Notes: a model not told the origin generated them from the letters alone. Positions 6,370 to 63,283 are shown, numbered from the stretch's first letter. The stretch is DNA of 64,000 nucleotides from IMGVR_UViG_3300044591_002232:124001-188000; one strand, 5' to 3'. Numbers and translations: made by a program.

Positions 6370-6410
6370 CTAAATAGTTTTAATAAATAACTAAAGAAAC
6401 CCCGTTAAAA

Positions 6411-6746
6411 ATGTCGCTTCTTGATAAAAAATCCTCAGTAAAATTAAATTCTGGACAACTTGTTCAGGGAGTTGCTGTAGTTGATAGTGACGGAAATCAA
6501 GTTACTTCATTTGGGGGTAGTGGAGGTGGTTCTACAACTGTCGGGGTAGTAACAGTTTCTAATACCGTTTCTAATCCAGTTCCGGTTATTTCTGGATTAA
6601 ATATTCCAAACCACAATAGAGTATCCCTTGCATATTCGGGATCTAATTTAGTTGGTGTTGCATACAGTTTTAATAATGTCGGTGTTGCTACTTTAACTCT
6701 TTCTTATGATGGGAGTAATAACCTTATTTCGGTCGTTAGGAGCTGA
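6411..6746 (+). CDS. Hypothetical protein, G/S/V rich
   Basis: ORF track; preceded by CTAAATA near 6370. Confidence 0.55.
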   Translation: MSLLDKKSSVKLNSGQLVQGVAVVDSDGNQVTSFGGSGGGSTTVGVVTVSNTVSNPVPVISGLNIPNHNRVSLAYSGSNLVGVAYSFNNVGVATLTLSYDGSNNLISVVRS

Positions 6747-6751
6747 TTTTT

Positions 6752-7450
6752 ATGCAATATAAGTTCAACCCATTTACTGGAACCCTGGATGCGGCTGGCG
6801 GCGGCAACCCTGCTGGCAGTAGTGGCGACATTCAGCTAAACCTGGATGGCGCCTTCGGTGCTGTTTCCAGTTTTCGCTGGATTACTGGTGAATTGCAGGT
6901 TCCGGGTGACATCAAACTTGATGACGGCGGCGGCTTTACTACAACAATTCAGCAAGTAACGCCGACCAAGAACAACGTCATCTCATTCCCCGATCAGACG
7001 GGGACTGTGGCCTTGGTGGGCGGCTCTACTGGGCAGGTTCTCTACAACCTGAACGGTGCTCTTGCTGGCACTGACACTATCTTCAATGCCACGACTGGCA
7101 CCCGGTTCACGCTGCCATTCGGCTACGGGATCGGCGCTGGAGGCACGCAGACCCAGGCTACCAGCAAGAGCACTGGGGTGACGCTGGACACCCGCTGCGG
7201 GCAGGTAACGATGAATGCGGCTGAGCTGACAGCCAACACGGCGGTGTCGTTCACGCTCACCAACAGCCAGATCACGGCGACCGACCTGATCATCATCAAC
7301 CACGTTTCAGGCGGCACGACCGGGGCGTACATGTTCGGTGCCCGAGCGGCTGCTGGTTCGGCCACGATCACCGTGCGGAACGTGACTGCTGGGGCTCTGA
7401 GCGAAGCGGTTGTGATCGCTTTTGCAGTAGTAAAAGCCACTACTAACTGA
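6752..7450 (+). CDS. Tail fibre/adhesin-like protein; start of GC-rich island
   Basis: G/T/A-rich beta-structure sequence; base composition shifts to GC-rich shortly after the start codon. Confidence 0.55.
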   Translation: MQYKFNPFTGTLDAAGGGNPAGSSGDIQLNLDGAFGAVSSFRWITGELQVPGDIKLDDGGGFTTTIQQVTPTKNNVISFPDQTGTVALVGGSTGQVLYNLNGALAGTDTIFNATTGTRFTLPFGYGIGAGGTQTQATSKSTGVTLDTRCGQVTMNAAELTANTAVSFTLTNSQITATDLIIINHVSGGTTGAYMFGARAAAGSATITVRNVTAGALSEAVVIAFAVVKATTN

Positions 7451-7464
7451 GGAGATCACCACCC

Positions 7465-7869
7465 ATGGCTTCATTCACTGTCGAGATTCCCGATTATCTG
7501 CTTCCGGCCCTGGTGGCAGAGTTCAGTCTGGTGCAGGGCAAGGTGCCTGCGGCAACGCCTGAGGAGTATTTCAAGGCGAGCGTGGTGGAAATCATCCGCC
7601 AGCGTGCCGAGATCTACAAAGTTGGGCCGTACTTCGTCGGTGCGGTTGACCCGCAGTTCAATCAGGACGGGACACCGTATGGCTGGGCGCCGCCGCCTGA
7701 GCGGCCTGCGGCACTCACTGTCGGTCAGACATGGATTGATGGCAGCGGGCAGGAGTGGACGGTGGTGCAGGCCATTAACCCTGACGGCACGTTTGCTGCA
7801 GATGATCCTGAAACGCCCGAGCGCGAGTCTCTGGCCTGGGTGCAGACGGATGGAGGTGGCGACGGATGA
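7465..7869 (+). CDS. Hypothetical protein (GC-rich island)
   Basis: ORF with GAGGAG RBS upstream; overlaps next start. Confidence 0.6.
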   Translation: MASFTVEIPDYLLPALVAEFSLVQGKVPAATPEEYFKASVVEIIRQRAEIYKVGPYFVGAVDPQFNQDGTPYGWAPPPERPAALTVGQTWIDGSGQEWTVVQAINPDGTFAADDPETPERESLAWVQTDGGGDG

Positions 7870-8654
7870 CGTTGATATGGCGCCCAGGCTACATAACAAC
7901 ATTTGCTGATCCTGATGTTCAGTCGTATTTGACAAGGGTAGAGGAGGCCGATAATCAGGGATTGGAATACCCCGTGGCGGTGGCGATTGATGAGTTTATT
8001 AGGGGCTGCAAGGCTGATGGGATCTGGAGCGCTATCAAGGCGAGTTGCATCATGGCCGGCGCCCGCACGCTGGCCGGTGCGCTGGTGCCGCTGGTGGGGC
8101 CTGCGCCGACAAATATTGGTTTTGTGGCGGGGGATTACAACAGGAAGACGGGGTTGGTGGGGGGTGGCTCCGTTAAGGCGCTTAACAGCAATAGGGCTCG
8201 TAGTGCCGACCCGATCGACTCTTTCCACGCTTCCCTGTATTTAAGCACTACTGGCGGTAACGCTCTGTTTGGGTTGGCCAATGACGGCCAATTTGATCAA
8301 ATGCTTGCCGTTAATAGCAGCACGGGCACTTCTTTTAGGGGCAGAATTGTAGCTATTGACAACAGGGTAACTGGCTTTGTTGGGGCCAGCAATACTGCCG
8401 CTGCCTTAACGGCAAGAGCGAACGGCACCAATTCAACCAATACAGGCGCAATGTACGGGGCTTTTGCTAACTCAGGCAAATACTATGTATTTGCCCGAAA
8501 TACTGGAACAGGCGACGCTGATGGGGTCGTTAGTAGCGGCTCTCCTACTTTCAGCCGTCTCGCCTTCTACAGCATAGGCGAATCCCTAAACCTCGCCCTG
8601 CTGGATGCCCGCATCACCACCCTAATCAACAGATTCGCAGTCGTAATACCATGA
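7866..8654 (+). CDS. Hypothetical virion-like protein, paralog A
   Basis: Shares GCKADGIWSAIKASC..AGARTLAGALVPLVGPAPTN and RLAFYSIGESLNLALLDARITTLIN with 8651-9445. Confidence 0.7.
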   Translation: MTLIWRPGYITTFADPDVQSYLTRVEEADNQGLEYPVAVAIDEFIRGCKADGIWSAIKASCIMAGARTLAGALVPLVGPAPTNIGFVAGDYNRKTGLVGGGSVKALNSNRARSADPIDSFHASLYLSTTGGNALFGLANDGQFDQMLAVNSSTGTSFRGRIVAIDNRVTGFVGASNTAAALTARANGTNSTNTGAMYGAFANSGKYYVFARNTGTGDADGVVSSGSPTFSRLAFYSIGESLNLALLDARITTLINRFAVVIP

Positions 8655-9445
8655 GCCCAATTTACACTCCAGGAAAGTTAATACTTCGCCGGACGTATAT
8701 TGGCCTGGACGACCCTGACGCTGCGGCATACATCACAGCGGTCGAGATTGCAGATGGTCAGCCCTTGGAGATTGAGGTTCGGGTGGCAGTTCATTCGTTT
8801 GTAAAAGGCTGCAAGGCGGATGGCATCTGGAGCGCGATCAAAGCCTCCTGCATCCTTGCCGGCGCCCGCACACTGGCCGGTGCGTTGGTGCCGCTGGTGG
8901 GGCCTGCGCCGACGAATTTTAATTTCGTGGCTGGTGACTACAACCGCAAGACGGGGTTGGTGGGGAATGGGAGTACGAAGTATCTGGACAGCGGCAGGAA
9001 TAACAACGCTGATCCGCAAGATAGCAAGCATCTGGCAGTATTCAAATCAAGCAACGCAGGCAAGCTGGGGGGCCTCTTAGGCACTGCGTTGAACGCAAAT
9101 GGTACATCATGGATTTTTGAAGGTTTTAGTGGAGGCAGCGATACCTATCGAGTCAATACAAACCCTTCAATCATACTCTCCCTAGGATCTTATCCTGACA
9201 CGGGATTTATAGGCATTAACCGTTCGTCGTCGAGTAACTCAACGCGAAGGTATTCAGGGGCAACAATCTCTGATGCCAGCACCTCTCAAGCGCCATTAGC
9301 CGCAAATGCTCTGGTGTTTAGTGCCGCAGGCCAGCCAACCGACGCCCGCCTCGCCTTCTACTCCATCGGCGAATCCCTCAACCTCGCCCTGCTGGATGCC
9401 CGCATCACCACCCTAATCAACACGTTCGGAGCTGTTATCCCATGA
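8651..9445 (+). CDS. Hypothetical virion-like protein, paralog B
   Basis: Tandem paralog of 7866-8654; ATGA overlap. Confidence 0.7.
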   Translation: MSPIYTPGKLILRRTYIGLDDPDAAAYITAVEIADGQPLEIEVRVAVHSFVKGCKADGIWSAIKASCILAGARTLAGALVPLVGPAPTNFNFVAGDYNRKTGLVGNGSTKYLDSGRNNNADPQDSKHLAVFKSSNAGKLGGLLGTALNANGTSWIFEGFSGGSDTYRVNTNPSIILSLGSYPDTGFIGINRSSSSNSTRRYSGATISDASTSQAPLAANALVFSAAGQPTDARLAFYSIGESLNLALLDARITTLINTFGAVIP

Positions 9446-9515
9446 CCCATGTAATGAGCTATAGCAAACCAACCCCATTTTCCACTGCCTCTAACACTGC
9501 TGCGGAGGTAACACC

Positions 9516-10172
9516 ATGAGTTGGCTTATTACTGCCAAGCAGTACATTCCCGCCGTAATTGGCGAGCCATTCGGTGGCGGCTTCTTCGCTGGCTATATCA
9601 GCCACACTGCTGATGGCAACCCCACTCATGCGCTGATCGTGGCGCCTAGGGCTACTGGGGCGACGGGAACGGGTTATACGTTGACGACGCAGAGGCAGTG
9701 GAAGACAACAGACACAGCGACTGCAGGAGCGAACAGCGTATTTAATGGGGCAGCAAACACCGCTGCCATAGTGACGGCAGGCATCGCCGATCATCCTGCC
9801 GCGCAGTTCTGTGTTGGCTTAAGCATTGGTGGATTCACTGATTGGTACTTACCAGCAGTGGCTGAACTAAATATAGCTTATTTCAACCTCAAGCCAAACA
9901 CTAACTCAAACTTTACCGGTGCAGGATCTAACATATACGCCGTGCCAAGTCGCGGCAGTAATTTCACAGCAGGCAATCCGGCGCAAACGGCGCTAACAGC
10001 GTTTGTTAGCGGCGGGGAGCAATTCCAGTCGTCTGACCATTGGGCATCATCCGAAGCTAGTGCAACAAATGGCAATTACTATGGCTTCAACAGTGGGTTT
10101 CCAGGTAGCAGAGCAAAAACGACCTCAACCACGGCGGCGAACGTTCGCGCCTTCCGCCGCATCGCCCTCTAA
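9516..10172 (+). CDS. DUF1566/C-type-lectin-fold-like protein
   Basis: GGFTDWYLPAVAEL and C-terminal HWASSE...N...F..G....K....NVRAFRR pattern. Confidence 0.55.
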   Translation: MSWLITAKQYIPAVIGEPFGGGFFAGYISHTADGNPTHALIVAPRATGATGTGYTLTTQRQWKTTDTATAGANSVFNGAANTAAIVTAGIADHPAAQFCVGLSIGGFTDWYLPAVAELNIAYFNLKPNTNSNFTGAGSNIYAVPSRGSNFTAGNPAQTALTAFVSGGEQFQSSDHWASSEASATNGNYYGFNSGFPGSRAKTTSTTAANVRAFRRIAL

Positions 10173-30450: not shown

Positions 30451-30702
30451 ATGAACATTAAACTAATTTTATTTCCAAATTCTCTGATTCTTATTTCTCA
30501 GATTATGGAAGTTGTCCCAGAAGATATTGGACAACCAGACTGTAAGATCATTGAACCTTTTGAGATTAAAGGTGACTTTTTAGAACCCTGGTTGATAAAT
30601 TACTCTACACAAAATACTTTTATGATGCATTCGGATAAATTCCTGACTATTGCTGATCCAAATTCTCCACTACTTGAAAAATATCAAGAACTTATTAAGT
30701 AA
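30451..30702 (+). CDS. Conserved hypothetical upstream of gp43
   Basis: LISQIMEV..DIGQPDCKIIEPF, FLEPWL; coupled to gp43. Confidence 0.65.
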   Translation: MNIKLILFPNSLILISQIMEVVPEDIGQPDCKIIEPFEIKGDFLEPWLINYSTQNTFMMHSDKFLTIADPNSPLLEKYQELIK

Positions 30703-33200
30703 TGTTTTATACAAGTGTTAAACAAATTGGAAGCTATGTTTATGAACGAGGTTATGATAATGAAGGAGTACCCTTTCAAGACAAGGTAGCCTTCAGACCC
30801 ACTTTTTATATTTCCTCTAACAAAGAATCCAATTGGAAAACATTGGATGGAAAAAACGTTGCCGCGATCAACCCCGGATCAATGTATGAATGTAGGGAAT
30901 GGCTTGAAAAGTACAAAGACGTTGACGGAATTTCTGTCTATGGTCATGAAACTGCGATTTATCAGTACCTTTCCGAAAAGTATCCAGAAGAGATTGAAGA
31001 TTTTAATATCAATAAAATCAGGCTTTATACACTTGATATTGAAACTGCCGCCGAACTTGGAGGATTTCCTGAACCAGATATCGCCCAGGAAGAAATTCTC
31101 CTGATTACTATTCAGGATTATTCAACCAAGAAAATTTATACCTGGGGAAGTCGGCCTTTTTCTGAGGTAATGGATAATTATGTTTATCAAGAATGTGCCA
31201 ATGAGGTCGATCTTCTTAATAAGTTCTTGACCTTCTGGGAGTCTAATTACCCGGATGTTGTGACTAGCTGGAACGGGAGTGGCTTCGATATTCCATACAT
31301 AATCAACCGAATCAAAAGAGTTCTTGGAACTGCCGATGCAAAAAGACTTTCTCCTTGGAAGTTTATCAGGGATCGTCAGGTCCAAAAAAACAACAGAACG
31401 GAAACACAATACGAAATTTATGGAGTAAGTCTTCTTGACTACATGGAGCTTTATAAAAAGTATTCATTCAAAAACCCAGAAAATTACAGACTGGATACTA
31501 TTGCCTATAATGAACTAGGCCAGAATAAACTGGATCACTCTCAGTATGAGACCTTTAAGGACTTTTATACTTACGGATGGGATACCTACGTCAAATATAA
31601 CAAGATTGACGTAGAACTGGTTGATCGGCTAGAAGAAAAACTTCAACTGATTAACATGGCGATTGATCTTGCTTATCAATCTAGGTCTAATTACGAAGAC
31701 GTTTTTTATCAGGTGCGAATGTGGGACAACATTATCTTCAATTACCTCAATAAAAAGAAGATTGCCATTCCACTTAAAAAGCAATCAAATAAGTCAGAAA
31801 AGTTTGCGGGTGCTTATGTAAAGGAGCCAATTCCAGGTCTTTATGGTTGGACAGTGACTCTTGACCTTACGTCACTCTACCCACATATTATGATGCAACA
31901 CAACGTGAGCCCTGAGACTCTTATAGACCAACCATTTCCTTCAATATCTGTTGATAAGATTGTTAAAAAACAAGTAGATACATCAATCTATCCAGAGTAT
32001 TCAATTTGCCCTAATGGTTCAATGTATTCAAAAGAACGTCAGGGTTTTATTCCGGCCATTCTTGAGGACATGTATGAAAAAAGAAAGCAATACAAGAATC
32101 TCCAGATCGCCGCCGAAAAGGAATACGAAAAATCTAAAGACAATTCCTTAAGATATAAAATCTCTAATTATAAGGTAAAGCAATTGAGTCTTAAGGTCTG
32201 TCTAAACAGTGGTTACGGGGCTCTTGGATCTCCATATTTTAGGTTTTATGAACTAAGAAATGCCGAGGCCATTACCTCATCAGGTCAACTTGCCCTCAAA
32301 TGGATCGAGAATAAACTAAACATTTATTTCAATAAACTCCTTAAGACTGAAAAAGTTGACTACTGCATTTATGGTGATACTGATTCAGTGATGCTCAATG
32401 TTGATCCACTAGTCAATAAAATATTTGAAGGAAAAGACGCCTCAAAAGAAAAGATTGTTAATTTTATTAACACCATATTTTCAACCAAGATTCAAGAATA
32501 CATCAATGAGTCTTATACTGAACTAGCCAATTATCTTCATGCTTATAAAAACAAGCTACACATGAAGAGAGAAAAAATTGCCGATAAGTTTCTTATTACA
32601 GGCAAAAAGCATTACATTATCAATGTATGGGATAATGAAGGAGTAAGGTATTCTGAGCCAAAGATTTCTGTTACTGGGATTGAGGCGGTCAAGTCTTCTA
32701 CTCCGGCCTTTTGCCGTGATAAACTTAATGCGGCCTTTAAGGTTTTAATGAATTATACCGAAGAGGACATGATTAAATTTGTTGAAGAATCTAAAAAAGA
32801 GTTCTTCAAACTTGATCCTGAAGAAGTGGCATTTCCAAAAGGTGTATCAGACGTGACCAAATTTTCGTCAACAACCTCCCTATATAAAAAGGGAACACCT
32901 ATCCATGTACGAGGTTCCATCCTATACAACAACAGCCTCAAAAAACATGGCCTGGAGAACAAATACAACTTTATATCCAACGGCGAAAAGATAAAATATT
33001 GCTACTTGAAGATGCCCAATCCGATCATGGAAAATGTGATTGGATTTATACAGACTCTACCAAAAGAATTCGGTCTACATGCTTACGTGGATTATGAGAC
33101 CCAGTTCGATAAAACTTTTGTGCAACCGTTAAAGGCAATATTGGATATTATTGGTTGGAAAACAGAAGAAACAATTACACTCGATCAATTTTTCATTTAA
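30702..33200 (+). CDS. gp43: Family B DNA polymerase, uninterrupted
   Basis: LDIET exonuclease motif, DLTSLYPH, KVCLNSGYG, YGDTDS. Confidence 0.97.
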   Translation: MFYTSVKQIGSYVYERGYDNEGVPFQDKVAFRPTFYISSNKESNWKTLDGKNVAAINPGSMYECREWLEKYKDVDGISVYGHETAIYQYLSEKYPEEIEDFNINKIRLYTLDIETAAELGGFPEPDIAQEEILLITIQDYSTKKIYTWGSRPFSEVMDNYVYQECANEVDLLNKFLTFWESNYPDVVTSWNGSGFDIPYIINRIKRVLGTADAKRLSPWKFIRDRQVQKNNRTETQYEIYGVSLLDYMELYKKYSFKNPENYRLDTIAYNELGQNKLDHSQYETFKDFYTYGWDTYVKYNKIDVELVDRLEEKLQLINMAIDLAYQSRSNYEDVFYQVRMWDNIIFNYLNKKKIAIPLKKQSNKSEKFAGAYVKEPIPGLYGWTVTLDLTSLYPHIMMQHNVSPETLIDQPFPSISVDKIVKKQVDTSIYPEYSICPNGSMYSKERQGFIPAILEDMYEKRKQYKNLQIAAEKEYEKSKDNSLRYKISNYKVKQLSLKVCLNSGYGALGSPYFRFYELRNAEAITSSGQLALKWIENKLNIYFNKLLKTEKVDYCIYGDTDSVMLNVDPLVNKIFEGKDASKEKIVNFINTIFSTKIQEYINESYTELANYLHAYKNKLHMKREKIADKFLITGKKHYIINVWDNEGVRYSEPKISVTGIEAVKSSTPAFCRDKLNAAFKVLMNYTEEDMIKFVEESKKEFFKLDPEEVAFPKGVSDVTKFSSTTSLYKKGTPIHVRGSILYNNSLKKHGLENKYNFISNGEKIKYCYLKMPNPIMENVIGFIQTLPKEFGLHAYVDYETQFDKTFVQPLKAILDIIGWKTEETITLDQFFI

Positions 33201-55694: not shown

Positions 55695-55820
55695 ATGTCC
55701 GAATTACGTTACCAGATTTCTCGTCTTTGGCTACCTTTCCAATATTGGGGTCAGCTCATGTATTCTTATGATATTAGTACCAGGGAATATTTTTATTCAT
55801 TGATTAATGGTAAATCGTGA
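55695..55820 (+). CDS. Small hypothetical (ATG 55695 preferred because a promoter lies in 55614-55690)
   Basis: ORF track plus promoter motif. Confidence 0.4.
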   Translation: MSELRYQISRLWLPFQYWGQLMYSYDISTREYFYSLINGKS

Positions 55821-56242
55821 TTCAAAAAAGTCATCTAAAAAAAAGTATTCTTGATCAGGCCATTGCCGTTGCCATGGCCTCGGATGCCCCTAAGAAAATG
55901 GGAGCCATTCTTCTTAAGAGAAATAAAATCATTTCGGCTGCGGTTAATGATTATGAAAAGACCCATCCGGTTCAGTATTGGGCCGCTCAAAATGCTGCCA
56001 AGATCTTCAATGATGATTCTCTTGCAAAAAAGGTATTTTGTCATTGTGAGATAAATTGTCTAATTAAGGCAAAAGAGACCGCTGATACTATTGTTGTTTG
56101 CCGTGTTGGTGGTCATGGCAAGAAATACATAAGAAATGCCAGACCCTGTAAATTGTGTTCGGTTTTTCTTATAAAGAATAAAATTTATAATATCCATTAT
56201 TCCACCGATAATGGATTCGTTTATGAAAACTGGGAGGATTAA
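55817..56242 (+). CDS. Cytidine/dCMP deaminase-fold zinc protein
   Basis: HCEINC (HxE) and ARPCKLC (PCxxC). Confidence 0.75.
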   Translation: MIQKSHLKKSILDQAIAVAMASDAPKKMGAILLKRNKIISAAVNDYEKTHPVQYWAAQNAAKIFNDDSLAKKVFCHCEINCLIKAKETADTIVVCRVGGHGKKYIRNARPCKLCSVFLIKNKIYNIHYSTDNGFVYENWED

Positions 56243-56243
56243 A

Positions 56244-56396
56244 ATGTCACTTATTTCACAAAAAGATCGAAAACTTGCTATTGAGGCCTTGGAGTCTTAT
56301 GCATATAAGTTCGATCTATCACAAGAAAAACGGATGGAGCTAAATGCCTTGATCAATTGGATTAAGTTAGAAATTTATAAGAACGAGCCGGTTTAA
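56244..56396 (+). CDS. Small conserved hypothetical
   Basis: MSLISQKDRKLAIEALE..LINWIKLE; GGAGG RBS. Confidence 0.55.
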   Translation: MSLISQKDRKLAIEALESYAYKFDLSQEKRMELNALINWIKLEIYKNEPV

Positions 56397-56495
56397 GAAC
56401 TGGCACATACGCCTTACTTTAGGATTTATCTGTGCTATATACTATGGATGTGGGATAGACCACGCCAAACTTAAAATTCTAAGGAGTTTAGAATC

Positions 56496-57542
56496 ATGAA
56501 AAAATACGACGCAATTGTTTTTATTGGAAGATTTCAGCCTTTTCATAATGCTCATCTAGAAATTGTAAAAAGAGCATATGAACTGACTGATAATCTCATT
56601 ATGATTATTGGTTCTCAGTATAAACCAGTAACCTACAAAAATCCATTTCAAATTTCTCTTGAGCACCTGAATACTCATAGTTACTGGTCTGCCTTGAGGC
56701 AATCCATTTTAGAAGTGACTTCAGAAGAAGCTCCACTAGAAATTGAAATTCAAGAAGATATTTATGGTGATACCAAGTGGTGTAATGAAGTTCAAGAAAA
56801 GGTAAAATATTGTCTTGAGACTATTTCACCATCTGCTAATGTTGGTATCATCGGTTGTGAAAAAGACGAGACTTCTTATTACCTGAAGATGTTTCCACAA
56901 TGGGAACTAATTGAGGTTCCTCTTGAGCAAAATCTAAGTGCAACTCAGATCAGGGAACTCTACTTTGTAGAAGAACCGAATATGGACTTTGTGAAAAGTG
57001 TTGTTCCAGAACAAATCTTCAACTATCTTGATAGTATGAAGAGTTCTGAATGGCATAATCATATCGTAAATGAGCGTAGATTTGTCGAGAAATATAAGTC
57101 TCAGTATGCTTCCTTGCCCTGGCCACCAATTTTTGTTACAGTAGATTCTGTAGTGTTTCAATCTGGTCATGTCTTGATGGTCCGTAGAAATGCCTATCCT
57201 GGAAAGGGCCTGATTGCCTTGCCAGGCGGTTTTCTAGACGCAAACACCGATTCCTCCCTAGAAGATGCTATGATTCGAGAACTCCGAGAGGAAACCGGAC
57301 TTAAGGTTCCTTCTCCGGTTCTTCGTGGATGTATTAAAAATACTCATGTATTTGATGATATTTATAGAAGCAGCCGAGGGCGAACAATTACTCATGCCTT
57401 TAATATTGTTCTTCCTGATGGAGAACTTCCAAGAGTAAAAGGTGGTTCTGATGCTGATAAGGCATTCTGGATTCCTTTCTCTGAACTTGACCCAAGAGAG
57501 TGCTTTGAAGACCATTATCAAATTATTCGATATTTTATATGA
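56496..57542 (+). CDS. nadM: Bifunctional NMN adenylyltransferase / ADP-ribose pyrophosphatase (NadM-Nudix)
   Basis: IGRFQPFHNAH, KNPF, LSATQIR, ALPGGF..DAMIRELREETGL Nudix box. Confidence 0.93.
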   Translation: MKKYDAIVFIGRFQPFHNAHLEIVKRAYELTDNLIMIIGSQYKPVTYKNPFQISLEHLNTHSYWSALRQSILEVTSEEAPLEIEIQEDIYGDTKWCNEVQEKVKYCLETISPSANVGIIGCEKDETSYYLKMFPQWELIEVPLEQNLSATQIRELYFVEEPNMDFVKSVVPEQIFNYLDSMKSSEWHNHIVNERRFVEKYKSQYASLPWPPIFVTVDSVVFQSGHVLMVRRNAYPGKGLIALPGGFLDANTDSSLEDAMIRELREETGLKVPSPVLRGCIKNTHVFDDIYRSSRGRTITHAFNIVLPDGELPRVKGGSDADKAFWIPFSELDPRECFEDHYQIIRYFI

Positions 57543-58030
57543 AAACTATCAAAGGAGATCTAATTAAACTTGCCGAAAAAGGTAATTTTGATATTATTAT
57601 TCAAGGTTGTAACTGCTATAATGTTATGGGTGGGGGGTTGGCAAAACAACTTGCAGACCGATATCCCAAAGTAAAACAAGCGGATATGTGTACAACTAGG
57701 GGGGATAAATTAAAGTTGGGTAGGTTTACTACGGCTCAAATAAACACAGGAAAAACAATTTTTACTGTGATAAATGCCTACACTCAGTATGAAATGAGTA
57801 ATACTAAAGATGTATTTGAATATGGTGCCTTTGAAAAATTCTTAGAGTTATTTTCTAAATGTGTCCCTGATTATACACGGGGACCACATAGAAAAGTAAG
57901 CATTGGATTCCCTCAAATTGGCGCTGGACTTGCTGGTGGTGATTGGAGTAGAATTTCCAAAATGATTGAAAAGTTTTCAGAAGACGTTTCTGATTATGCT
58001 GATGTCACAGTAGTAGAATATCAACCTTGA
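57539..58030 (+). CDS. Macrodomain (Appr-1-p processing) protein
   Basis: IKGDLI, GCNC..MGGGLA, NAYTQ, FPQIGAGLAGGDW. Confidence 0.85.
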   Translation: MKTIKGDLIKLAEKGNFDIIIQGCNCYNVMGGGLAKQLADRYPKVKQADMCTTRGDKLKLGRFTTAQINTGKTIFTVINAYTQYEMSNTKDVFEYGAFEKFLELFSKCVPDYTRGPHRKVSIGFPQIGAGLAGGDWSRISKMIEKFSEDVSDYADVTVVEYQP

Positions 58031-58041
58031 GGTAAAAAATT

Positions 58042-58350
58042 ATGCCATGCTTTACACCGGAACCTACGCAAGAAGAAATTAAACTCGAACAAAAAAGTAA
58101 TAACAATAAAAAATATGGAATTAATAAAACTAATTCTGAATTAATTACATATTTGTTGAATATGTGTTGTGAAATGGGGGAAGTAATTTTTGAGCTTCAT
58201 ATGCAACATAGACTATCTAATGATACTTTGGCATGGTATCAGCAACATAGAGATAGAGATGATAAGGTAAAGGAAATTCAAACTGAATTATCTAAATTAG
58301 CCTTAAAAAAAGAAAGTCTTGAGCGAGAACTTAAGGCATTGAATGCTTGA
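58042..58350 (+). CDS. Hypothetical protein
   Basis: ORF track. Confidence 0.55.
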   Translation: MPCFTPEPTQEEIKLEQKSNNNKKYGINKTNSELITYLLNMCCEMGEVIFELHMQHRLSNDTLAWYQQHRDRDDKVKEIQTELSKLALKKESLERELKALNA

Positions 58351-58421
58351 CAGGTGTTAAAGTCATAAAAACACAATCAGGCGATAGACGCCGAAATTAA
58401 ACCTATTTTAAGGAGTTTAAA

Positions 58422-58955
58422 ATGGACCTAAACAAAAATTTACTGCTCAATTCGGATTCTTACAAGTATTCGCAGTTTAATCAATATCCCCCACAGACGG
58501 AAGGTGTATTTTCTTACATTGAAAGTCGTGGTGGTCATCACGATGAAACTCTCTTCTTTGGTCTTCAGATGTTTCTAAAAGACTATCTGATGAAGCCAAT
58601 TAGAATGGAAGATATTGATATTGCCGAGGCAATTATTCAGGCTCACGGTGAACCATTCTACCGTGGTGGTTGGGAATACATCGTCAAAAAGCACGGTGGA
58701 CATCTCCCCGTAAGAATCAAGGCTGTCCCTGAAGGAATGGTAATTCCTGTCAAGAATGTTTTGCTTACAATTGAAAATACCGACCCAAATTGCTACTGGT
58801 TGACTAGTTTCTTAGAGACTGCTCTACTTCGCTCGATTTGGTATCCGACGACAGTTGCGAGTAATTCTTATAATTCTAAGAAACTTATTCTCAATTATCT
58901 TATCCGCAATGGAGACCCAAATCTTATTGATTTTAAACTTCATGATTTTGGTGCT
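58422..58955 (+). CDS. nadV: Nicotinamide phosphoribosyltransferase exon 1
   Basis: NSDSYKYSQ, YIESRGG, LETALLRSIWYPTTVAS, ends LHDFGA. Confidence 0.93.
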
Positions 58956-59873
58956 TAACTCGGGCACCTAACTTTGTGAATTGCTGGAACCCCTAAGTTG
59001 TTTATACAATATGGAAATCAGCAGCCAAGACTACTATTAGTAGTAAGGTTCAGAGGCCATCGAAAGGGTTATTATTAATAACACTAAGTAGAGTACACTC
59101 AAGCGAGTGGAAGCGCAAAGACAGTAAAAAATACTGTAAGATATGGTCCAATCTTTATCGAAAGATAAAGCAGTTCGTATTCAACATAAATACTTCTAGA
59201 CCAAAATCATAAAATATTTATGTTAAAATTATTAGAAACCGTACCTAGTTTAGAAACATTTAGAGGCTATTCAATTTCTGATGATGGAAGAATTTTTTCT
59301 CATAAGACTAATAAATTTTTAAAACCATCCATAAGAATGGGAAATGGGTGTGCTTATGAAAGAATTGGTTTGACAGATTCAAATAGAGTCCGTAAAACAT
59401 TTTCAATTCATAGACTCGTTTGCATAGCTTTTAAATACAATCCCAATCATTTAAATTTAACTGTAAATCATATAGATGAAAATACTTTTAATAATCGTAT
59501 TGAAAATCTAGAATGGTTAACAATTGGAGAAAATATTAGATACTCTAAAGCAAATAAAACTTATGTTGGGGATCCTGATAAACTTACAACAGAGTTTAAT
59601 GAGGGTGACTACACAGTAAAAGAATTTGCCGAAAAGTATAATACTCCTTTAAATACTATGTGGGATATTTTAAATAAACTAAGTTCAACACAAAACAACA
59701 GAAAAAGAAGAGTATTTAATAAAGAGCTACGACTAGAAATTGCTTTAATGAGAAAATCAGGAAAGTCATTGAAAGAAGTTGCCAAATACTTTAATTGTTC
59801 TGAATCTATGGTTTCTAAGGTGTTTGATGAATACGAACGGGGTGTGTTTAGCGACCACACTTGAATAACTCCG
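58956..59873 (+). mobile_element. Group I intron (IA2-like) carrying an HNH ORF
   Basis: P1 ggtgct/gggcacc with U-G at splice site; P aattgctggaa, Q aatcagcag, R gttcagaggcca, S aagatatggtcc; P3 ctttgtg/cgcaaag; terminal G at 59873; P10 ctcg/cgag. Confidence 0.9.
59220..59864 (+). CDS. Intron-encoded HNH (NUMOD4-HNH type) homing endonuclease
   Basis: YSISDDGRIFS, IHRLVCIAF, VNHIDENTFNNRIENLEWLT. Confidence 0.88.
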   Translation: MLKLLETVPSLETFRGYSISDDGRIFSHKTNKFLKPSIRMGNGCAYERIGLTDSNRVRKTFSIHRLVCIAFKYNPNHLNLTVNHIDENTFNNRIENLEWLTIGENIRYSKANKTYVGDPDKLTTEFNEGDYTVKEFAEKYNTPLNTMWDILNKLSSTQNNRKRRVFNKELRLEIALMRKSGKSLKEVAKYFNCSESMVSKVFDEYERGVFSDHT

Positions 59874-60770
59874 CGAGGAGTATCTTCTTTAGAATCCGCA
59901 GGAATTGGTGGACTAGCTCACCTAGTCAACTTTAAAGGAACTGATACTGTTGCGGCACTTCTTTATGGTAAAGAATTTTATCACGAAGATATTGCCGGAT
60001 TTAGTATCCCAGCATCCGAACATAGTGTTGCGTGCTCGTATAATGCAATTCCAACTGTAGAAATAATTGATGAAAAAAATGAATTATCTTACATTCGTAG
60101 AATGTTAGAATTTTTATACACCCATCAAATGGTATCTATTGTTGGTGATGCATACGACATTTATAATTTTATAAATTTAATGGGTAGTATAAAAGATGAA
60201 ATTATTGAAAAAACAAAAGATAACAAATTTGTAATTCTTCGCCCAGACAGTGGAAACCCAGTGGAGGTTGTTTTAAAGTGCGCCCAACTTTTGGATAATC
60301 ACTTTGGAAGTACTATGAACTCTAAGGGTTATAAGGTTCTAAATCACGTCAGACTCATTCAAGGGGACGGTGTGAATTATGAAACTATTGACCGGGTTCT
60401 TCACGTTCTAGAAGCAAATGGATACAGTTCGGATAACATTGCCTTCGGTCAAGGTGGCGGATTGCTTCAACACGTAAATCGTGATGATTTTAAATTCGCA
60501 ATGAAGTGCAGTTCGGTAAATGTAAACGGAACCTGGCGTGACGTTTATAAAGACCCTGTAACCGACCCAGGCAAAACATCTAAAAAAGGTAGACTTCAGC
60601 TCATCAAAAATGAACAAGGAGAATATCAGACTGTTCCAGAAAGACCCTGGAATAAAGACGAGTTAGTAACTATTTATGAGAATGGTCAACTTTTGGTTGA
60701 TTATACTCTTGAGCATGTAAGAATTAATGCAAGCCAATGCTTGCACAATTTCTTCGCTAAAGCAGAGTGA
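59874..60770 (+). CDS. nadV: Nicotinamide phosphoribosyltransferase exon 2
   Basis: Starts RGVSS; SIPASEHS, VGDAYD, RPDSG, IQGDG, AFGQGGGLLQ, KTSKKG; in frame with track ORF 60102. Confidence 0.92.
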   Translation, partial: RGVSSLESAGIGGLAHLVNFKGTDTVAALLYGKEFYHEDIAGFSIPASEHSVACSYNAIPTVEIIDEKNELSYIRRMLEFLYTHQMVSIVGDAYDIYNFINLMGSIKDEIIEKTKDNKFVILRPDSGNPVEVVLKCAQLLDNHFGSTMNSKGYKVLNHVRLIQGDGVNYETIDRVLHVLEANGYSSDNIAFGQGGGLLQHVNRDDFKFAMKCSSVNVNGTWRDVYKDPVTDPGKTSKKGRLQLIKNEQGEYQTVPERPWNKDELVTIYENGQLLVDYTLEHVRINASQCLHNFFAKAE

Positions 60771-60800
60771 TATAAATACCTCAGGTTTAAATAACTTGAG

Positions 60801-61046
60801 GTGTTTTTTATGCTTAAAATTAGATGTAGAATGTGTGGAAATGAGGTACATGGTTTTGGAACCTGCGGGTGTCCAAATATGGCATCTATCCGCAACGATA
60901 AAATCACGGCCCTGGATCTGTCTCAGGTGGTTATGCTTGAGACTTATGAAAAGGCCTCAAATAAGCATCTGACCAATTCGGATCTTATGTGGCAAGAGGA
61001 AAGGAAACAACGTGGAGTAAAAAGGCTGGACTTTGAAGTTCGATAA
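60801..61046 (+). CDS. Small Cys-rich conserved hypothetical
   Basis: CRMC..CGCPN..DLSQV. Confidence 0.6.
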   Translation: MFFMLKIRCRMCGNEVHGFGTCGCPNMASIRNDKITALDLSQVVMLETYEKASNKHLTNSDLMWQEERKQRGVKRLDFEVR

Positions 61047-61058
61047 ATAGAATTAAAA

Positions 61059-61430
61059 ATGTTATACAAACAATTTCTTGTAGAGTCTAGAGAAAAACAG
61101 ATTCAGTCCTTTACTAGTTTTGTAAAGGACTATCTTGGCCTAGATGATCTACCAGAGATTGTTATTATTAATGATCCAAAGTTTTCTATTGAAAACAAAA
61201 CCTTTGGATGTTTTGATCTTATGAATGATATTATTAAAATTCAAATAGCTAACAGACATCCGTTGGACGTGATGAGAACTTTGGCTCATGAGATGGTGCA
61301 TTACAAGCAGAAAATTTCAGGGGCAGAATTAGATCCAACATCTGGATCAGATTGTGAAAATGAGGCAAACTCTGTTGCTGGAGAAATTATGCGTCATTAT
61401 ACAAAAACCATCGAAAATCACGGGTACTAA
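61059..61430 (+). CDS. HExxH metallopeptidase-like protein
   Basis: MRTLAHEMVHYKQ, ENEAN. Confidence 0.7.
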   Translation: MLYKQFLVESREKQIQSFTSFVKDYLGLDDLPEIVIINDPKFSIENKTFGCFDLMNDIIKIQIANRHPLDVMRTLAHEMVHYKQKISGAELDPTSGSDCENEANSVAGEIMRHYTKTIENHGY

Positions 61431-61433
61431 ACA

Positions 61434-61580
61434 TTGGACGAAACAACTAGAGAAAATTGGAAAAAAGTCAAAGAAGCCATGGAGGCATCAGGAAATACAA
61501 ACAATATGTATTATAAAAGAGCCTGTCAAATCTTAAAAGGCGGTGGTGATCCATTAGAAAAATTATTGAACGATGATTAA
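61434..61580 (+). CDS. Small conserved hypothetical (TTG start)
   Basis: ENWKKVKEAMEASGNTNNMYYKRA read by eye. Confidence 0.5.
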   Translation: MDETTRENWKKVKEAMEASGNTNNMYYKRACQILKGGGDPLEKLLNDD

Positions 61581-61713
61581 AGAAGAAGATTATAGAGATT
61601 TGTTTGAGAGAGTCTGGCATTTAAAAGTCCAAGAACTCATGCATGAACCATATGATGATGACATGATTAACGACGATTTCTGGACTCATGAAAACCAAAC
61701 GAACTATCTTTGA
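61573..61713 (+). CDS. Small hypothetical (46 aa)
   Basis: MIKEEDYRDLFERVWHLKVQELMHEP read by eye. Confidence 0.45.
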   Translation: MIKEEDYRDLFERVWHLKVQELMHEPYDDDMINDDFWTHENQTNYL

Positions 61714-62134
61714 TTGGGCCAAGATTAGCCTGATTATTGAGGCGATTATTGAATTTATTTCTAGGGTGTTTAAGATTCCCAAGGATAAATTATGGCCCCT
61801 GGTTGATGAAATTCAAAGAGAATTTCATAAAAGAGGCTGGATCGATAATACCCTAAATGAGTACATTATAAAAACCCCAGAACTTCTTGATCAAAGGGTC
61901 GAGAGGGATGTTGATAAGGCAATAGAAAATTATGAGAAATTAGAAGAACCTGAACCGGTTAATATGGTCAATGAGACTATTTTAAAAGAAATAGAAACTG
62001 GTGATTATACCGAAGAGCAAAAAAAGATTATTAAAGATGCCGTTTTTTATGAAAAAGAGCCTGATGGAAGTACTGCTCAGAGTCTTTTAGGTGGGGAAAT
62101 TGGCATAAAGGCCCCGTGGGTTCACAAAGATTGA
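61688..62134 (+). CDS. Hypothetical protein
   Basis: ORF track. Confidence 0.55.
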   Translation: MKTKRTIFDWAKISLIIEAIIEFISRVFKIPKDKLWPLVDEIQREFHKRGWIDNTLNEYIIKTPELLDQRVERDVDKAIENYEKLEEPEPVNMVNETILKEIETGDYTEEQKKIIKDAVFYEKEPDGSTAQSLLGGEIGIKAPWVHKD

Positions 62135-62157: not shown

Positions 62158-62232
62158 CCGGTTATCGCCTAACTTGGTATGGCACCTCCTTTGGGAGGAG
62201 GAAAAATTTAAGTTCAAATCTTAATAACCGGA
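62158..62232 (+). tRNA. trnP: tRNA-Pro(UGG), CCA not encoded
   Basis: Acceptor CCGGTTA/TAACCGG, anticodon stem CCTCC/GGAGG with TGG, T arm TTAAG-TTCAAAT-CTTAA, discriminator A. Confidence 0.88.
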
Positions 62233-62509: not shown

Positions 62510-63283
62510 GTGAGACAAATTTTTATGGACAGTTTAGGAGATCTTCTAAAATCCCAAGAACAAATAGAGGCCGGAAGAAAAGCCGATCCCTTTTTGCCTC
62601 TTATGGCAAGAATTGATGGTAAATGTTTTAGCAAATTTACCAAAGGACTCAAAAGACCTTTTGATGCGAAATTTGTAGAGTTAATGGTTGAAACCACCAA
62701 CCATTTGGTAAATGAAAGTGAGTCTCTTTTGGGTTATTGTCAATCAGACGAGATTACTCTGTATTGGTATCTCGATAAGGGAAATTATTCTAATAGGGAA
62801 TTCTGGTTTTCAGGTAAGTTCCAAAAGTTAACTTCTGTTCTTGCATCAACCGCGACCTCATTTTTTGTTGCAAATCTTCAAAAATTTCTTCCTGAAAAAG
62901 TGGGTCAATATCCGACTTTCGATGCAAGGGTTTGGTCTGTTCCTGATTTAGAGCATGTTTATAAAAACTTTCTTTGGCGGTTTAAGGATGCCCAAAAGAA
63001 CTCCGTTTCAATGTATGCAAGACATTTCTTTTCTCATAAAAATTTACAGAATAAAACTGGAAACGAAATGAAAGAAATGTTAAAAGAAATTGGAAATCCT
63101 TGGGAAGATCTACCAGATTTCTTTAAATCTGGAACCTATATAAAAAGAAAACGGATCTTGCTTGATCCATCCCAATGCTTAGATGTTCCAGAAAAATACA
63201 GACCACTTGAGCCTATTATTAGAACTACTGTTTCTGTCTGGAACCCACCCGAAACAATTTCACCTGAATGGTTTAACTTATGA
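62510..63283 (+). CDS. Thg1-like 3'-5' nucleotidyltransferase (tRNA-His guanylyltransferase family)
   Basis: ARIDGKCFSKFT, YCQSDEITL, FDARVW, NFLWR..DAQKNS. Confidence 0.85.
   Translation: MRQIFMDSLGDLLKSQEQIEAGRKADPFLPLMARIDGKCFSKFTKGLKRPFDAKFVELMVETTNHLVNESESLLGYCQSDEITLYWYLDKGNYSNREFWFSGKFQKLTSVLASTATSFFVANLQKFLPEKVGQYPTFDARVWSVPDLEHVYKNFLWRFKDAQKNSVSMYARHFFSHKNLQNKTGNEMKEMLKEIGNPWEDLPDFFKSGTYIKRKRILLDPSQCLDVPEKYRPLEPIIRTTVSVWNPPETISPEWFNL

What the first reader, a model, noticed from the sequence alone, without database searches (positions are those of the whole stretch)
56496..60770. Complete NAD+ salvage module with an embedded macrodomain gene
Seen: NMNAT-Nudix, macrodomain, a hypothetical ORF and NAMPT are co-oriented behind early-type promoters. 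Established: NAMPT plus NMNAT rebuild NAD+ from nicotinamide and have been shown in other phages to counter NAD-depleting defences (SIR2/TIR types). Nudix yields ribose-5-phosphate from ADP-ribose, and macrodomains bind or remove ADP-ribose. Inference: this is an extended anti-defence unit that recycles ADP-ribose and reverses host ADP-ribosylation in a cyanobacterial host.
Basis: partly seen in the sequence, partly recalled or inferred. Interest (0 to 1): 0.6.

Follow-up and report, generated by a model that had tools for sequence, protein, structure and literature searches.

The report
Intron-split NAD salvage operon with macrodomain

Summary
The gene order is real: NMNAT-Nudix (56496-57542), macrodomain (57539-58030), an ORFan (58042-58350) and NAMPT, all on the + strand. 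This is the known phage NARP2 pathway.

NAMPT is not one ORF. It is two exons (58422-58955 and 59874-60770) split by a 918-nt group I intron (58956-59873). The intron scores 75.9 bits against Rfam (cut-off 50) and carries an HNH homing endonuclease gene (59220-59864).

The splice junction is fixed in four ways:
- P1 and P10 pairings, with a terminal G.
- Intron-less alleles in relatives, including a natural 476-aa protein 97-98% identical to exon 1 plus exon 2.
- A solved NAMPT whose residues 193|194 match the junction.
- An RNA-library contig joining the intron's last base to its first.

Sister phages carry the intron, an intein-like insert at the RPD|SG motif, both, or neither. One lake sample holds intron-plus and intron-less alleles at equal depth.

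The macrodomain fold is confirmed (pLDDT 90.8; nearest DarG, Poa1p, TARG1). It keeps its position next to NAMPT in every related locus examined. Relatives and Synechococcus phage B3 place a NADAR hydrolase in the same slot.

"Early-type promoters" are not supported. The anti-defence role and the macrodomain's substrate remain inferences.

The parts
56496..57542 (+). Bifunctional NMN adenylyltransferase / Nudix ADP-ribose pyrophosphatase (NadM/NatV type), 348 aa
   Evidence: PF01467 plus PF00293. NCBIfam NF003786 gives 376 bits over residues 2-347. PHROG 395 gives 221 bits. The translation shows the nucleotidyltransferase His motif near residue 17 and a Nudix box around residues 253-275.
57539..58030 (+). 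Macrodomain protein, 163 aa. Its ATG overlaps the stop codon of the upstream gene by 4 nt (ATGA).
   Evidence: PHROG 335 at 165 bits. The only NCBIfam hit is DarG, at 39.7 bits. Profile A1 against PDB hits Poa1p 6lfu at E 4e-11, then BT1257, SCO6735, DarG and TARG1. The AF2 model has pLDDT 90.8. Foldseek top hits are DarG 5m31, Poa1p 6lfr and TARG1 4j5r, TM about 0.7. The overlap follows from the ORF coordinates.
58042..58350 (+). ORFan of 102 aa, a present/absent cassette among relatives
   Evidence: No Pfam, PHROG or NCBIfam family. Only 4 homologous clusters in 5.8 billion proteins. No lead from the Atlas. It is 99% identical in L004, L005 and L009 and absent from L003 and L006-L008.
58422..58955 (+). 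NAMPT exon 1 (178 codons, ends ...HDFGA)
   Evidence: PF18127 NAMPT_N. NF006629 profile positions 3-180. Matches residues 19-193 of PDB 7yqo. 97% identical to residues 1-177 of the uninterrupted protein P0126.
58956..59873 (+). Group I intron, 918 nt. It starts with an in-frame TAA and ends in G.
   Evidence: Rfam RF00028 gives 75.9 bits, E 3e-19, over 58931-59170. The boundaries come from P1/P10, intron-less alleles and an RNA contig that joins 59873 to 58956. A variant intron in L017 has 5 compensatory pairs.
58950..58968 (+). P1: the last 6 nt of the 5' exon (58950-58955) pair with the internal guide (58963-58968), with a U.G pair at the splice site
   Evidence: Read from the window file. 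The same helix appears in the minimum-free-energy fold.
58959..58962 (+). P10 guide: 4 nt complementary to the first 4 nt of exon 2 (59874-59877)
   Evidence: Read from the window file.
59220..59864 (+). Intron-encoded HNH homing endonuclease, 214 aa, lying 3' of the catalytic core
   Evidence: NUMOD4, HNH_3 and HTH_23. PHROG 59 at 129 bits. 99% identical in L003 and L020, 80% in L017/L018.
59874..60770 (+). NAMPT exon 2 (298 codons, starts RGVSS...)
   Evidence: PF04095. NF006629 positions 181-462. Matches residues 194-478 of PDB 7yqo. 98% identical to residues 179-476 of P0126.
60774..60806 (+). Terminator-like hairpin followed by a T run, 4 nt after the NAMPT stop codon
   Evidence: Consensus scan only.

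Best explanation
The region is a NARP2-type NAD+ reconstitution operon of a 250-kb T4-like, cyanophage-related lake virus. NAMPT makes NMN from nicotinamide and host PRPP. The NMNAT domain makes NAD+ from NMN. The fused Nudix domain cleaves free ADP-ribose.

A macrodomain gene is translationally coupled to the Nudix gene and most likely releases free ADP-ribose from a conjugate. My split on its role is:
- about 0.45: ADP-ribosylated nucleic acid or protein made by a host ADP-ribosyltransferase defence, in the manner of an orphan DarG-like antitoxin;
- about 0.40: a small ADP-ribose derivative;
- about 0.15: binding only.

NAMPT is interrupted, two codons after the nicotinamide-specifying Asp of the HDFG motif (residue role from my own knowledge of NAMPT), by a mobile group I intron carrying an HNH homing endonuclease. 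A 476-aa enzyme can be made only after RNA self-splicing at 58955|59874. The intron spreads laterally among related phages, and an intein-like element competes for the same gene.

Shown here: anatomy, junction, fold, synteny, population polymorphism, and an RNA junction that fits excision.
Inferred: enzyme activities, the anti-defence role and the macrodomain substrate.
For: Operon and families.

NARP2 rather than NARP1: NMNAT is adjacent, and the complete genome has no Prs/Adps-like gene.

Intron:
- Rfam gives 75.9 bits against a cut-off of 50.
- P1 with a U.G pair, P10, and a terminal G.
- The core fold has z = -2.9.
- Five compensatory pairs in the L017 variant.

Junction:
- Exons 1 and 2 map to abutting positions of NF006629 (3-180 and 181-462), of PHROG 448 and of PDB 7yqo (19-193 and 194-478).
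- Intron-less genes in L004-L006 and L021 are contiguous exactly there.
- P0126 (476 aa = 178 + 298) is 97% and 98% identical to the two exons.
- A DNA contig in run X9 leaves the window right after 58955 and continues with an RGVSS-coding exon.

Exons are under purifying selection: 47 synonymous against 13 non-synonymous codon differences from the intron-less allele.

RNA evidence: metatranscriptome contigs at 90% identity or more lie only on the intron, apart from 30 bases of exon 2 at the end of one contig and two short pieces on the ORFan (58348-58378). One contig carries the intron's last 11 nt joined directly to its first base.

Mobility:
- The L003 intron is 99.7% identical, while neighbouring genes are 55-90% identical.
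- L009 is about 100% identical to the window except 58700-60300.
- Run X3 holds intron-plus (depth 18.2) and intron-less (19.2) alleles between flanks at about 39.

Macrodomain. Its synteny. NADAR in the same slot.

Published phage orphan NADAR and DarG-like anti-DarT factors: PMC11825919 and PMC13309987.
Against: - No splicing assay was done, and no ligated-exon read from this phage was seen.
- The RNA evidence is assembled contigs from two libraries labelled marine. It comes from a relative whose copy lacks 506 nt of the endonuclease gene, and it rests on an 11-nt junction. DNA contamination of RNA libraries cannot be excluded for the non-junction part.
- The Rfam scan of the whole window at gathering threshold missed the intron, so detection depends on the filters.
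- The window's macrodomain scores below the Pfam gathering score and far below the DarG cut-off.
- The positions of Poa1p H23, S30 and F152 are Q22, V29 and A132, so a Poa1p-like phosphatase mechanism is doubtful.
- The DarG/TARG1 catalytic lysine could not be aligned.
- No promoter evidence.
- In phage B3 the macro homologue lies 24 kb from NAMPT, so the linkage is not universal.
Confidence: 0.8

Rival explanations
1. NAMPT is a dead gene. The insertion no longer splices, so the phage has lost NARP2 and only NMNAT-Nudix and the macrodomain still work.
For: There is no continuous ORF. No ligated-exon RNA was seen for this phage. The endonuclease-deleted copy in an RNA library shows the element does decay.
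Against: The catalytic core scores well above the Rfam cut-off, and P1, P10 and the terminal G are intact. Helices are kept by compensatory changes. Both exons are free of stops and show 47 synonymous against 13 non-synonymous codon differences from an intact allele. The intron-bearing allele is held at 0.91-1.00 of sampled words in 8 lake runs dated 2020-2024. The RNA junction fits precise excision.
Confidence: 0.07
2. The operon is a metabolic booster rather than a counter-defence. It raises NAD+ for phage DNA and nucleotide synthesis in a nutrient-limited host. The macrodomain merely clears by-products such as ADP-ribose-1''-phosphate or O-acetyl-ADP-ribose into the Nudix step.
For: The best sequence match of the macrodomain is the yeast ADP-ribose-1''-phosphate phosphatase Poa1p, and PHROG 335 is labelled phosphatase. 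The macro gene is translationally coupled to the Nudix gene. Neighbours are nucleotide and tRNA genes: dCMP deaminase, tRNA-Pro and a Thg1-like gene. NARP2 over-produces NAD+ even without a defence system. Iyer et al. 2022 propose soluble ADP-ribose derivatives as substrates of viral Macro and NADAR domains.
Against: NARP2 from KVP40 was shown to overcome Thoeris and other NADase defences. The genome has no Tpt1, the enzyme family I know to be the source of ADP-ribose-1''-phosphate precursors. The residues probed by mutation in Poa1p are not conserved here. The two readings are not mutually exclusive.
Confidence: 0.3
3. The macrodomain is a binder (sponge) or degrader of ADP-ribose-derived immune signals such as Thoeris gcADPR-type molecules. 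On this reading it is not a de-ADP-ribosylase.
For: One family member carries the ThsA_Macro family PF20016 in precomputed annotation. The residues probed by mutation in Poa1p are absent. It is placed inside an operon that counters TIR/SIR2 systems.
Against: There is no direct evidence. The nearest structures are hydrolases. The family keeps invariant polar residues around the predicted pocket, which suits catalysis as well as binding.
Confidence: 0.12

Closest known systems
NARP2 (Nampt + Nmnat/NatV of Vibrio phage KVP40; bioRxiv 10.1101/2024.02.11.579819)
   Same: The same two enzymes: a NAMPT-clade phosphoribosyltransferase and an NMNAT-Nudix fusion, adjacent and co-oriented. No Adps/Prs gene is present in the genome. 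Exon 2 is 45% identical to KVP40 NadV.
   Different: A macrodomain gene and an ORFan sit between the two enzymes. NAMPT is split by a group I intron. The term search of that paper found no mention of a macrodomain or an intron.
Phage group I introns with HNH or GIY-YIG homing endonucleases (T4 td and nrdB, cyanophage psbA, FelixO1-like and Campylobacter phage introns)
   Same: Compact catalytic core, P1/P10 guide, terminal G, an endonuclease ORF outside the core, insertion in a codon block for a conserved active-site motif, and patchy presence among close relatives. The core is 70-77% identical over 120-175 nt to introns in Campylobacter phage CP21 and in FelixO1-like DNA polymerase genes.
   Different: The host gene is NAMPT. 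I found no report of this in the paper library. The HNH protein is at most 35% identical to any in cultured phages. The same gene also hosts an intein-like element in relatives.
DarG macrodomain, TARG1 and Poa1p clade of macrodomains
   Same: The same fold, with TM 0.63-0.77. The N-terminal Gly-rich loop and the C-terminal Gly-rich loop align with Mtb DarG and with Poa1p.
   Different: It is a 163-aa stand-alone protein with no DarT-binding C-terminal domain. It scores 39.7 bits against a 250-bit cut-off. The Poa1p H23, S30 and F152 equivalents are Q, V and A. The catalytic lysine was not assessable.
Phage NADAR genes next to NadM/NadV (Iyer et al. 2022, PMC9503650) and phage orphan anti-DarT factors (AdfN NADAR, PMC11825919; chimallivirus DarG2-like macro, PMC13309987)
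   Same: An ADP-ribose hydrolase gene placed inside or beside the phage NAD+ salvage genes. Relatives L003, L006 and L013-L015 and Synechococcus phage B3 have NADAR in exactly this slot.
   Different: This genome has no NADAR at all and carries a macrodomain instead. No DarT-neutralising activity has been tested for this family.

Membership tests
NARP2 NAD+ reconstitution pathway | A NAMPT-clade enzyme (nicotinamide + PRPP), not a NARP1 Namat | tested here: met
   NAMPT_N plus NAPRTase domains. The exons cover NF006629 positions 3-462 and residues 19-478 of a solved NAMPT. The complete genome has no Prs/Adps-like gene. It is met only if the intron is spliced.
NARP2 NAD+ reconstitution pathway | An NMN adenylyltransferase encoded with it | tested here: met
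   Adjacent NMNAT-Nudix fusion. NF003786 gives 376 bits, just under the 397 equivalog cut-off. PF01467 and PF00293 are above their cut-offs.
NARP2 NAD+ reconstitution pathway | Restores NAD+ and rescues the phage from NADase defences | not testable with these tools
   Needs expression and plating assays.
Group I intron (Rfam RF00028) | Covariance-model score above the gathering score | tested here: met
   75.9 bits against 50, E 3e-19. The hit was missed in the whole-window gathering scan.
Group I intron (Rfam RF00028) | 5' exon ends in U paired with G in P1; P10 pairs with the 3' exon; the intron ends in G | tested here: met
   58950-58955 pairs with 58963-58968, 58959-58962 pairs with 59874-59877, and G is at 59873.
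Group I intron (Rfam RF00028) | Removal restores an uninterrupted, conserved reading frame | tested here: met
   Intron-less alleles L004-L006, L021 and L022/P0126. Residues 193|194 of PDB 7yqo.
Group I intron (Rfam RF00028) | Self-splicing with guanosine | tested here: inconclusive
   Only indirect evidence: an RNA-library contig joins the intron's last base to its first base, and the RNA contigs laid at 90% or more cover no NAMPT exon apart from the first 30 bases of exon 2. These are contigs, not reads, and come from a relative.
Macrodomain (PF01661) | Family score above cut-off and a macro fold | tested here: met
   The sequence score is 20.2 against 22, so that part is not met on its own. 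Several homologues carry PF01661. The family profile hits four solved macrodomain families. The AF2 model (pLDDT 90.8) matches macrodomains with probability 1.00.
DarG antitoxin (NF048014) | Equivalog score, a C-terminal DarT-binding domain and a catalytic lysine | tested here: not met
   39.7 bits against a 250 cut-off, and 163 aa against a 338-position model. The lysine region did not align. The protein may still work like the DarG macrodomain.
Poa1p-type ADP-ribose-1''-phosphate phosphatase | The residues probed by mutation in the Poa1p structures (H23, S30, F152) | tested here: not met
   They align to Q22, V29 and A132 in the window protein. The family consensus has H at position 22.
HNH homing endonuclease (I-HmuI-like, NUMOD4 + HNH_3) | Domains present, and the ORF sits inside a mobile intron with patchy distribution | tested here: met
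   Cleavage of the intron-less allele was not tested.

The most novel reading that the evidence does not exclude
The slot between NMNAT-Nudix and NAMPT is a dedicated position for orphan-antitoxin-type ADP-ribosyl hydrolases (macrodomain here; NADAR, or NADAR plus macrodomain, in relatives). The operon would then be a dual counter-defence unit: it rebuilds NAD+ after NADase attack, strips ADP-ribose from phage DNA or RNA after DarT-type attack, and feeds the released ADP-ribose to the coupled Nudix. Its output is in addition gated by two competing selfish elements, an RNA intron and a protein intein, in the rate-limiting gene.
Probability: 0.25. Interest if true: 0.7.

Novelty: new variant of a known kind. 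Interest (0 to 1): 0.5.

Why it matters
- NARP2 is a recently recognised, broad-spectrum way for phages to beat NAD+-depleting immunity. Here its rate-limiting gene depends on RNA self-splicing. In sister phages it depends on an in-frame intein-like insert, presumably removed by protein splicing, or on both.
- Automated gene calls split or truncate NAMPT. Many database entries are exon-2-only fragments of 226-259 aa, so surveys of NARP2 prevalence will under-count such phages.
- Near-isogenic intron-plus and intein-plus genomes co-exist in one lake sample. This gives a natural system for studying homing-element competition in an anti-defence gene.
- A macrodomain or NADAR hydrolase recurs in the same slot. 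That yields a concrete, testable hypothesis linking NAD+ salvage to reversal of ADP-ribosylation.

Tried and rejected
- The whole-window Rfam scan at gathering threshold gave only tRNA-Pro. A multi-locus scan also missed the nearly identical intron in L003. Only short-range scans with lax filters find it.
- I first took the 900-bp insertion in L007-L009 for a second intron. Rfam found nothing there, and the frame is open through it. It is an in-frame, intein-like insert: it starts with Cys and ends in Asn followed by Ser, with a weak Intein_splicing hit of 17.8 bits.
- I suspected that the divergent stretch of exon 2 (residues about 52-122, at most 66% identical to close relatives) was decay or unique. 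Rejected: the same variant occurs in uninterrupted 458-476-aa NAMPTs.
- Searches of the own genome for psbA, Tpt1, Prs and NADAR were all negative.
- ARAGORN does not call the intron-split tRNA-like gene in L002.
- The ORFan gave nothing in Pfam, PHROG, NCBIfam, the word search or the Atlas.
- An exact 25-mer of the intron core finds only two IMG/VR contigs.
- The catalytic lysine of DarG/TARG1 could not be placed, because the PDB alignments skip that region.
- The paper library gave no report of an intron in phage NAMPT.
- Not used: the large representative-protein search, complex prediction and the second fold job. No claim needed them.

Full report
**Setting**

The window is bases 124001-188000 of a complete 249,820-bp virus record with direct terminal repeats. 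Its DNA polymerase (30702-33200) is 66% identical to that of the freshwater Synechococcus phages B3 and B23 (Kyanoviridae). It is 52-54% identical to marine cyanomyoviruses. The DNA occurs in 22 DNA metagenome runs, 18 of them labelled lake water, from 20 studies. A cyanobacterial host is therefore plausible, but the genome has no psbA.

**Observation**

On the + strand lie four genes:
- an NMNAT-Nudix fusion (56496-57542);
- a 163-aa protein (57539-58030) whose ATG overlaps the preceding stop codon;
- a 102-aa ORF (58042-58350);
- NAMPT sequence.

NAMPT is not continuous. An ORF with the NAMPT_N domain ends at a TAA at 58956-58958. A 214-aa NUMOD4/HNH_3/HTH endonuclease ORF follows at 59220-59864. 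The NAPRTase-domain frame is open only from 59865 to 60770. Sigma-70-like sites are no more frequent than in shuffles, at 24 against 29.8 +/- 5.3. A terminator-like hairpin does follow the NAMPT stop codon.

**The intron**

A short-range Rfam scan finds a group I intron core at 58931-59170 (75.9 bits, cut-off 50, E 3e-19). The whole-window scan at gathering threshold had missed it.

The sequence itself gives the splice sites:
- The last six exon bases (58950-58955) pair with an internal guide at 58963-58968, ending in a U.G pair. This is P1.
- Bases 58959-58962 pair with the first four bases of exon 2. This is P10.
- The intron ends in G at 59873.

The intron is thus 58956-59873, 918 nt, with the endonuclease ORF 3' of the core. 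The core folds better than all 200 shuffles, z = -2.9. A diverged copy in L017 keeps three hairpins through five compensatory changes.

**Junction check without joining exons**

The exons were searched separately by reference, and natural intron-less genes served as the contiguous comparators.
- Exon 1 and exon 2 match abutting positions of NCBIfam NF006629 (3-180 and 181-462) and of PHROG 448 (11-199 and 200-495).
- They match abutting residues of the solved NAMPT 7yqo (19-193 and 194-478).
- Relatives L004-L006 and L021 have uninterrupted genes that are contiguous exactly there.
- The word search returned P0126, a natural 476-aa protein (178 + 298 = 476). It is 97% identical to exon 1 and 98% identical to exon 2.
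- Against its gene (L022) the exons show 47 synonymous and 13 non-synonymous codon differences. The differences crowd into the last 19 nt of exon 1 and the first 84 nt of exon 2. This intron-linked flank signature also supplies the P1 and P10 complements.

**Reads**

Only contigs were available.
- In lake DNA run X3, an intron-bearing contig (58907-59987, no mismatch, depth 18.2) co-exists with an intron-less contig (depth 19.2) between flanks at about 39. This is a presence/absence polymorphism within one sample.
- In run X9, a contig leaves the window exactly after 58955 and continues with an RGVSS-coding exon.
- In two metatranscriptome libraries labelled marine, contigs at 90% identity or more lie on the intron and on no NAMPT exon except the first 30 bases of exon 2 at the end of one contig. 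Two short pieces also lie on the ORFan (58348-58378).
- One of those RNA contigs carries the intron's last 11 bases joined directly to its first base, then continues through the core. It skips 59188-59693 (an endonuclease-deleted variant) and ends 30 bases into exon 2.
- The 59873-to-58956 junction is what a full-length intron circle would give, or template switching on precisely excised linear intron. The chance of an 11-of-11 match is about 2e-7.
- This supports excision at the predicted ends in a close relative. It is not proof for this phage, and DNA carry-over cannot be excluded for the non-junction parts.

**Mobility and the second element**

The L003 intron differs at 3 of 918 bases, while neighbouring genes are 55-90% identical. 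L009 is about 100% identical to the window over 55800-58700 and 60300-62100. In between it lacks the intron and carries a 312-aa in-frame insert at the RPD|SG motif. That insert begins with Cys and ends in Asn followed by Ser, so it is intein-like.

All four states occur among the loci:

| State | Loci |
|---|---|
| Neither element | L004-L006, L021, L022 |
| Intron only | window, L003, L020 |
| Intein-like insert only | L007-L009, L013-L016 |
| Both | L017, L018 |

Both elements sit in codons of conserved active-site motifs, as homing elements usually do.

**The macrodomain**

The Pfam score is just below threshold (20.2 against 22). Against that:
- PHROG 335 gives 165 bits.
- A 40-sequence profile hits Poa1p (E 4e-11), BT1257, SCO6735, DarG and TARG1.
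- The AF2 model (pLDDT 90.8) aligns best with the DarG, Poa1p and TARG1 macrodomains.

The positions of Poa1p H23, S30 and F152 are Q22, V29 and A132. The DarG/TARG1 lysine could not be aligned. From my memory of TARG1, not tested here, the invariant Thr-Gln at 82-83 would stand where TARG1 has Thr-Lys.

The gene keeps its place between NMNAT-Nudix and NAMPT in all related loci, at 55-99% identity. Relatives L003, L006 and L013-L015 add a NADAR gene in the same slot. Phage B3 has NADAR there, with its macro homologue 24 kb away. This genome has no NADAR.

Published work bears on this:
- NADAR has been noted beside NadM and NadV in phages, and soluble ADP-ribose derivatives have been proposed as substrates (PMC9503650).
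- Phage orphan NADAR and DarG-like macro proteins neutralise DarTG systems (PMC11825919 and PMC13309987).

**Mechanism proposed**

Host NADases give nicotinamide and ADP-ribose. After RNA splicing, NAMPT converts nicotinamide and host PRPP to NMN, and NMNAT makes NAD+. Nudix removes free ADP-ribose. The phage has no Prs, so any return of ribose-5-phosphate to PRPP is the host's work. The macrodomain, co-translated with Nudix, most likely liberates ADP-ribose from a conjugate. Its substrate is open.

**Verdict**

This is a known pathway (NARP2) in a new arrangement, with an embedded macrodomain and a previously unreported intron, or intein-like insert, in NAMPT.

Noticed in passing
L002 about 1463-1766 (own genome C1, about 188864-189167, roughly 0.9 kb beyond the window end): A second group I intron (Rfam 53.6 bits) sits in the anticodon loop of a tRNA-like gene with a long variable arm. 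It resembles the cyanobacterial tRNA-Leu(UAA) intron arrangement. ARAGORN does not call the gene.
   Followed up: partly
L007 5098-6033 (also L008, L009, L013-L018): A 312-aa in-frame intein-like insert in NAMPT between RPD and SG. It starts with Cys and ends in Asn followed by Ser, and has a LAGLIDADG-like stretch. It is absent from the window's gene, which reads RPDSG uninterrupted at about 60240-60254.
   Followed up: partly
window 58042-58350: The 102-aa ORFan is 99% identical in L004, L005 and L009, although the adjacent macro gene is only 64% identical in L004/L005. It is absent from L003 and L006-L008. This is the pattern of a recently moved cassette.
   Followed up: partly
window 60027-60240 (exon 2 residues about 52-122): This NAMPT segment, lying between the intron site and the intein site, is at most 66% identical to that of close relatives. 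It changes motifs conserved in the other NAMPTs compared (the HSTITSWG and VSDSYD blocks). The same variant exists in uninterrupted 458-476-aa NAMPTs, so it is a distinct allelic class and not decay.
   Followed up: partly
window 59188-59693: An RNA-library contig (run X24) carries the intron with this 506-nt stretch missing. The stretch covers most of the HNH gene, so this is an endonuclease-less mini-intron variant.
   Followed up: no
L013 3280-4978 (also L014, L015); L003 3133-3663; L019 3715-4245: Relatives carry a NADAR gene between NMNAT-Nudix and macro or NAMPT. So does Synechococcus phage B3 gp47, which is annotated as hypothetical. In L013-L015 a 351-aa DUF723 protein also sits there.
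   Followed up: partly
window 55817-56242, 62158-62232, 62510-63283: The flanks hold a dCMP-deaminase-like gene upstream, and tRNA-Pro(UGG) and a Thg1-like (tRNA-His guanylyltransferase family) gene downstream. This suggests a nucleotide and tRNA maintenance neighbourhood.
   Followed up: no
window 6001-10000: G+C rises to 50-54% against about 36% for the rest of the window. This may be a recently acquired gene block.
   Followed up: no
window 59868-59881: A small hairpin (5 pairs, loop of 4) spans the 3' splice site. It could belong to the P9/P10 region or could sequester the splice site.
   Followed up: no
whole window (method): The Rfam gathering-threshold scans of 64 kb and of 37 kb of loci missed a 75.9-bit group I intron that a 1.1-kb scan found. 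Long-range scans under-report such introns.
   Followed up: yes
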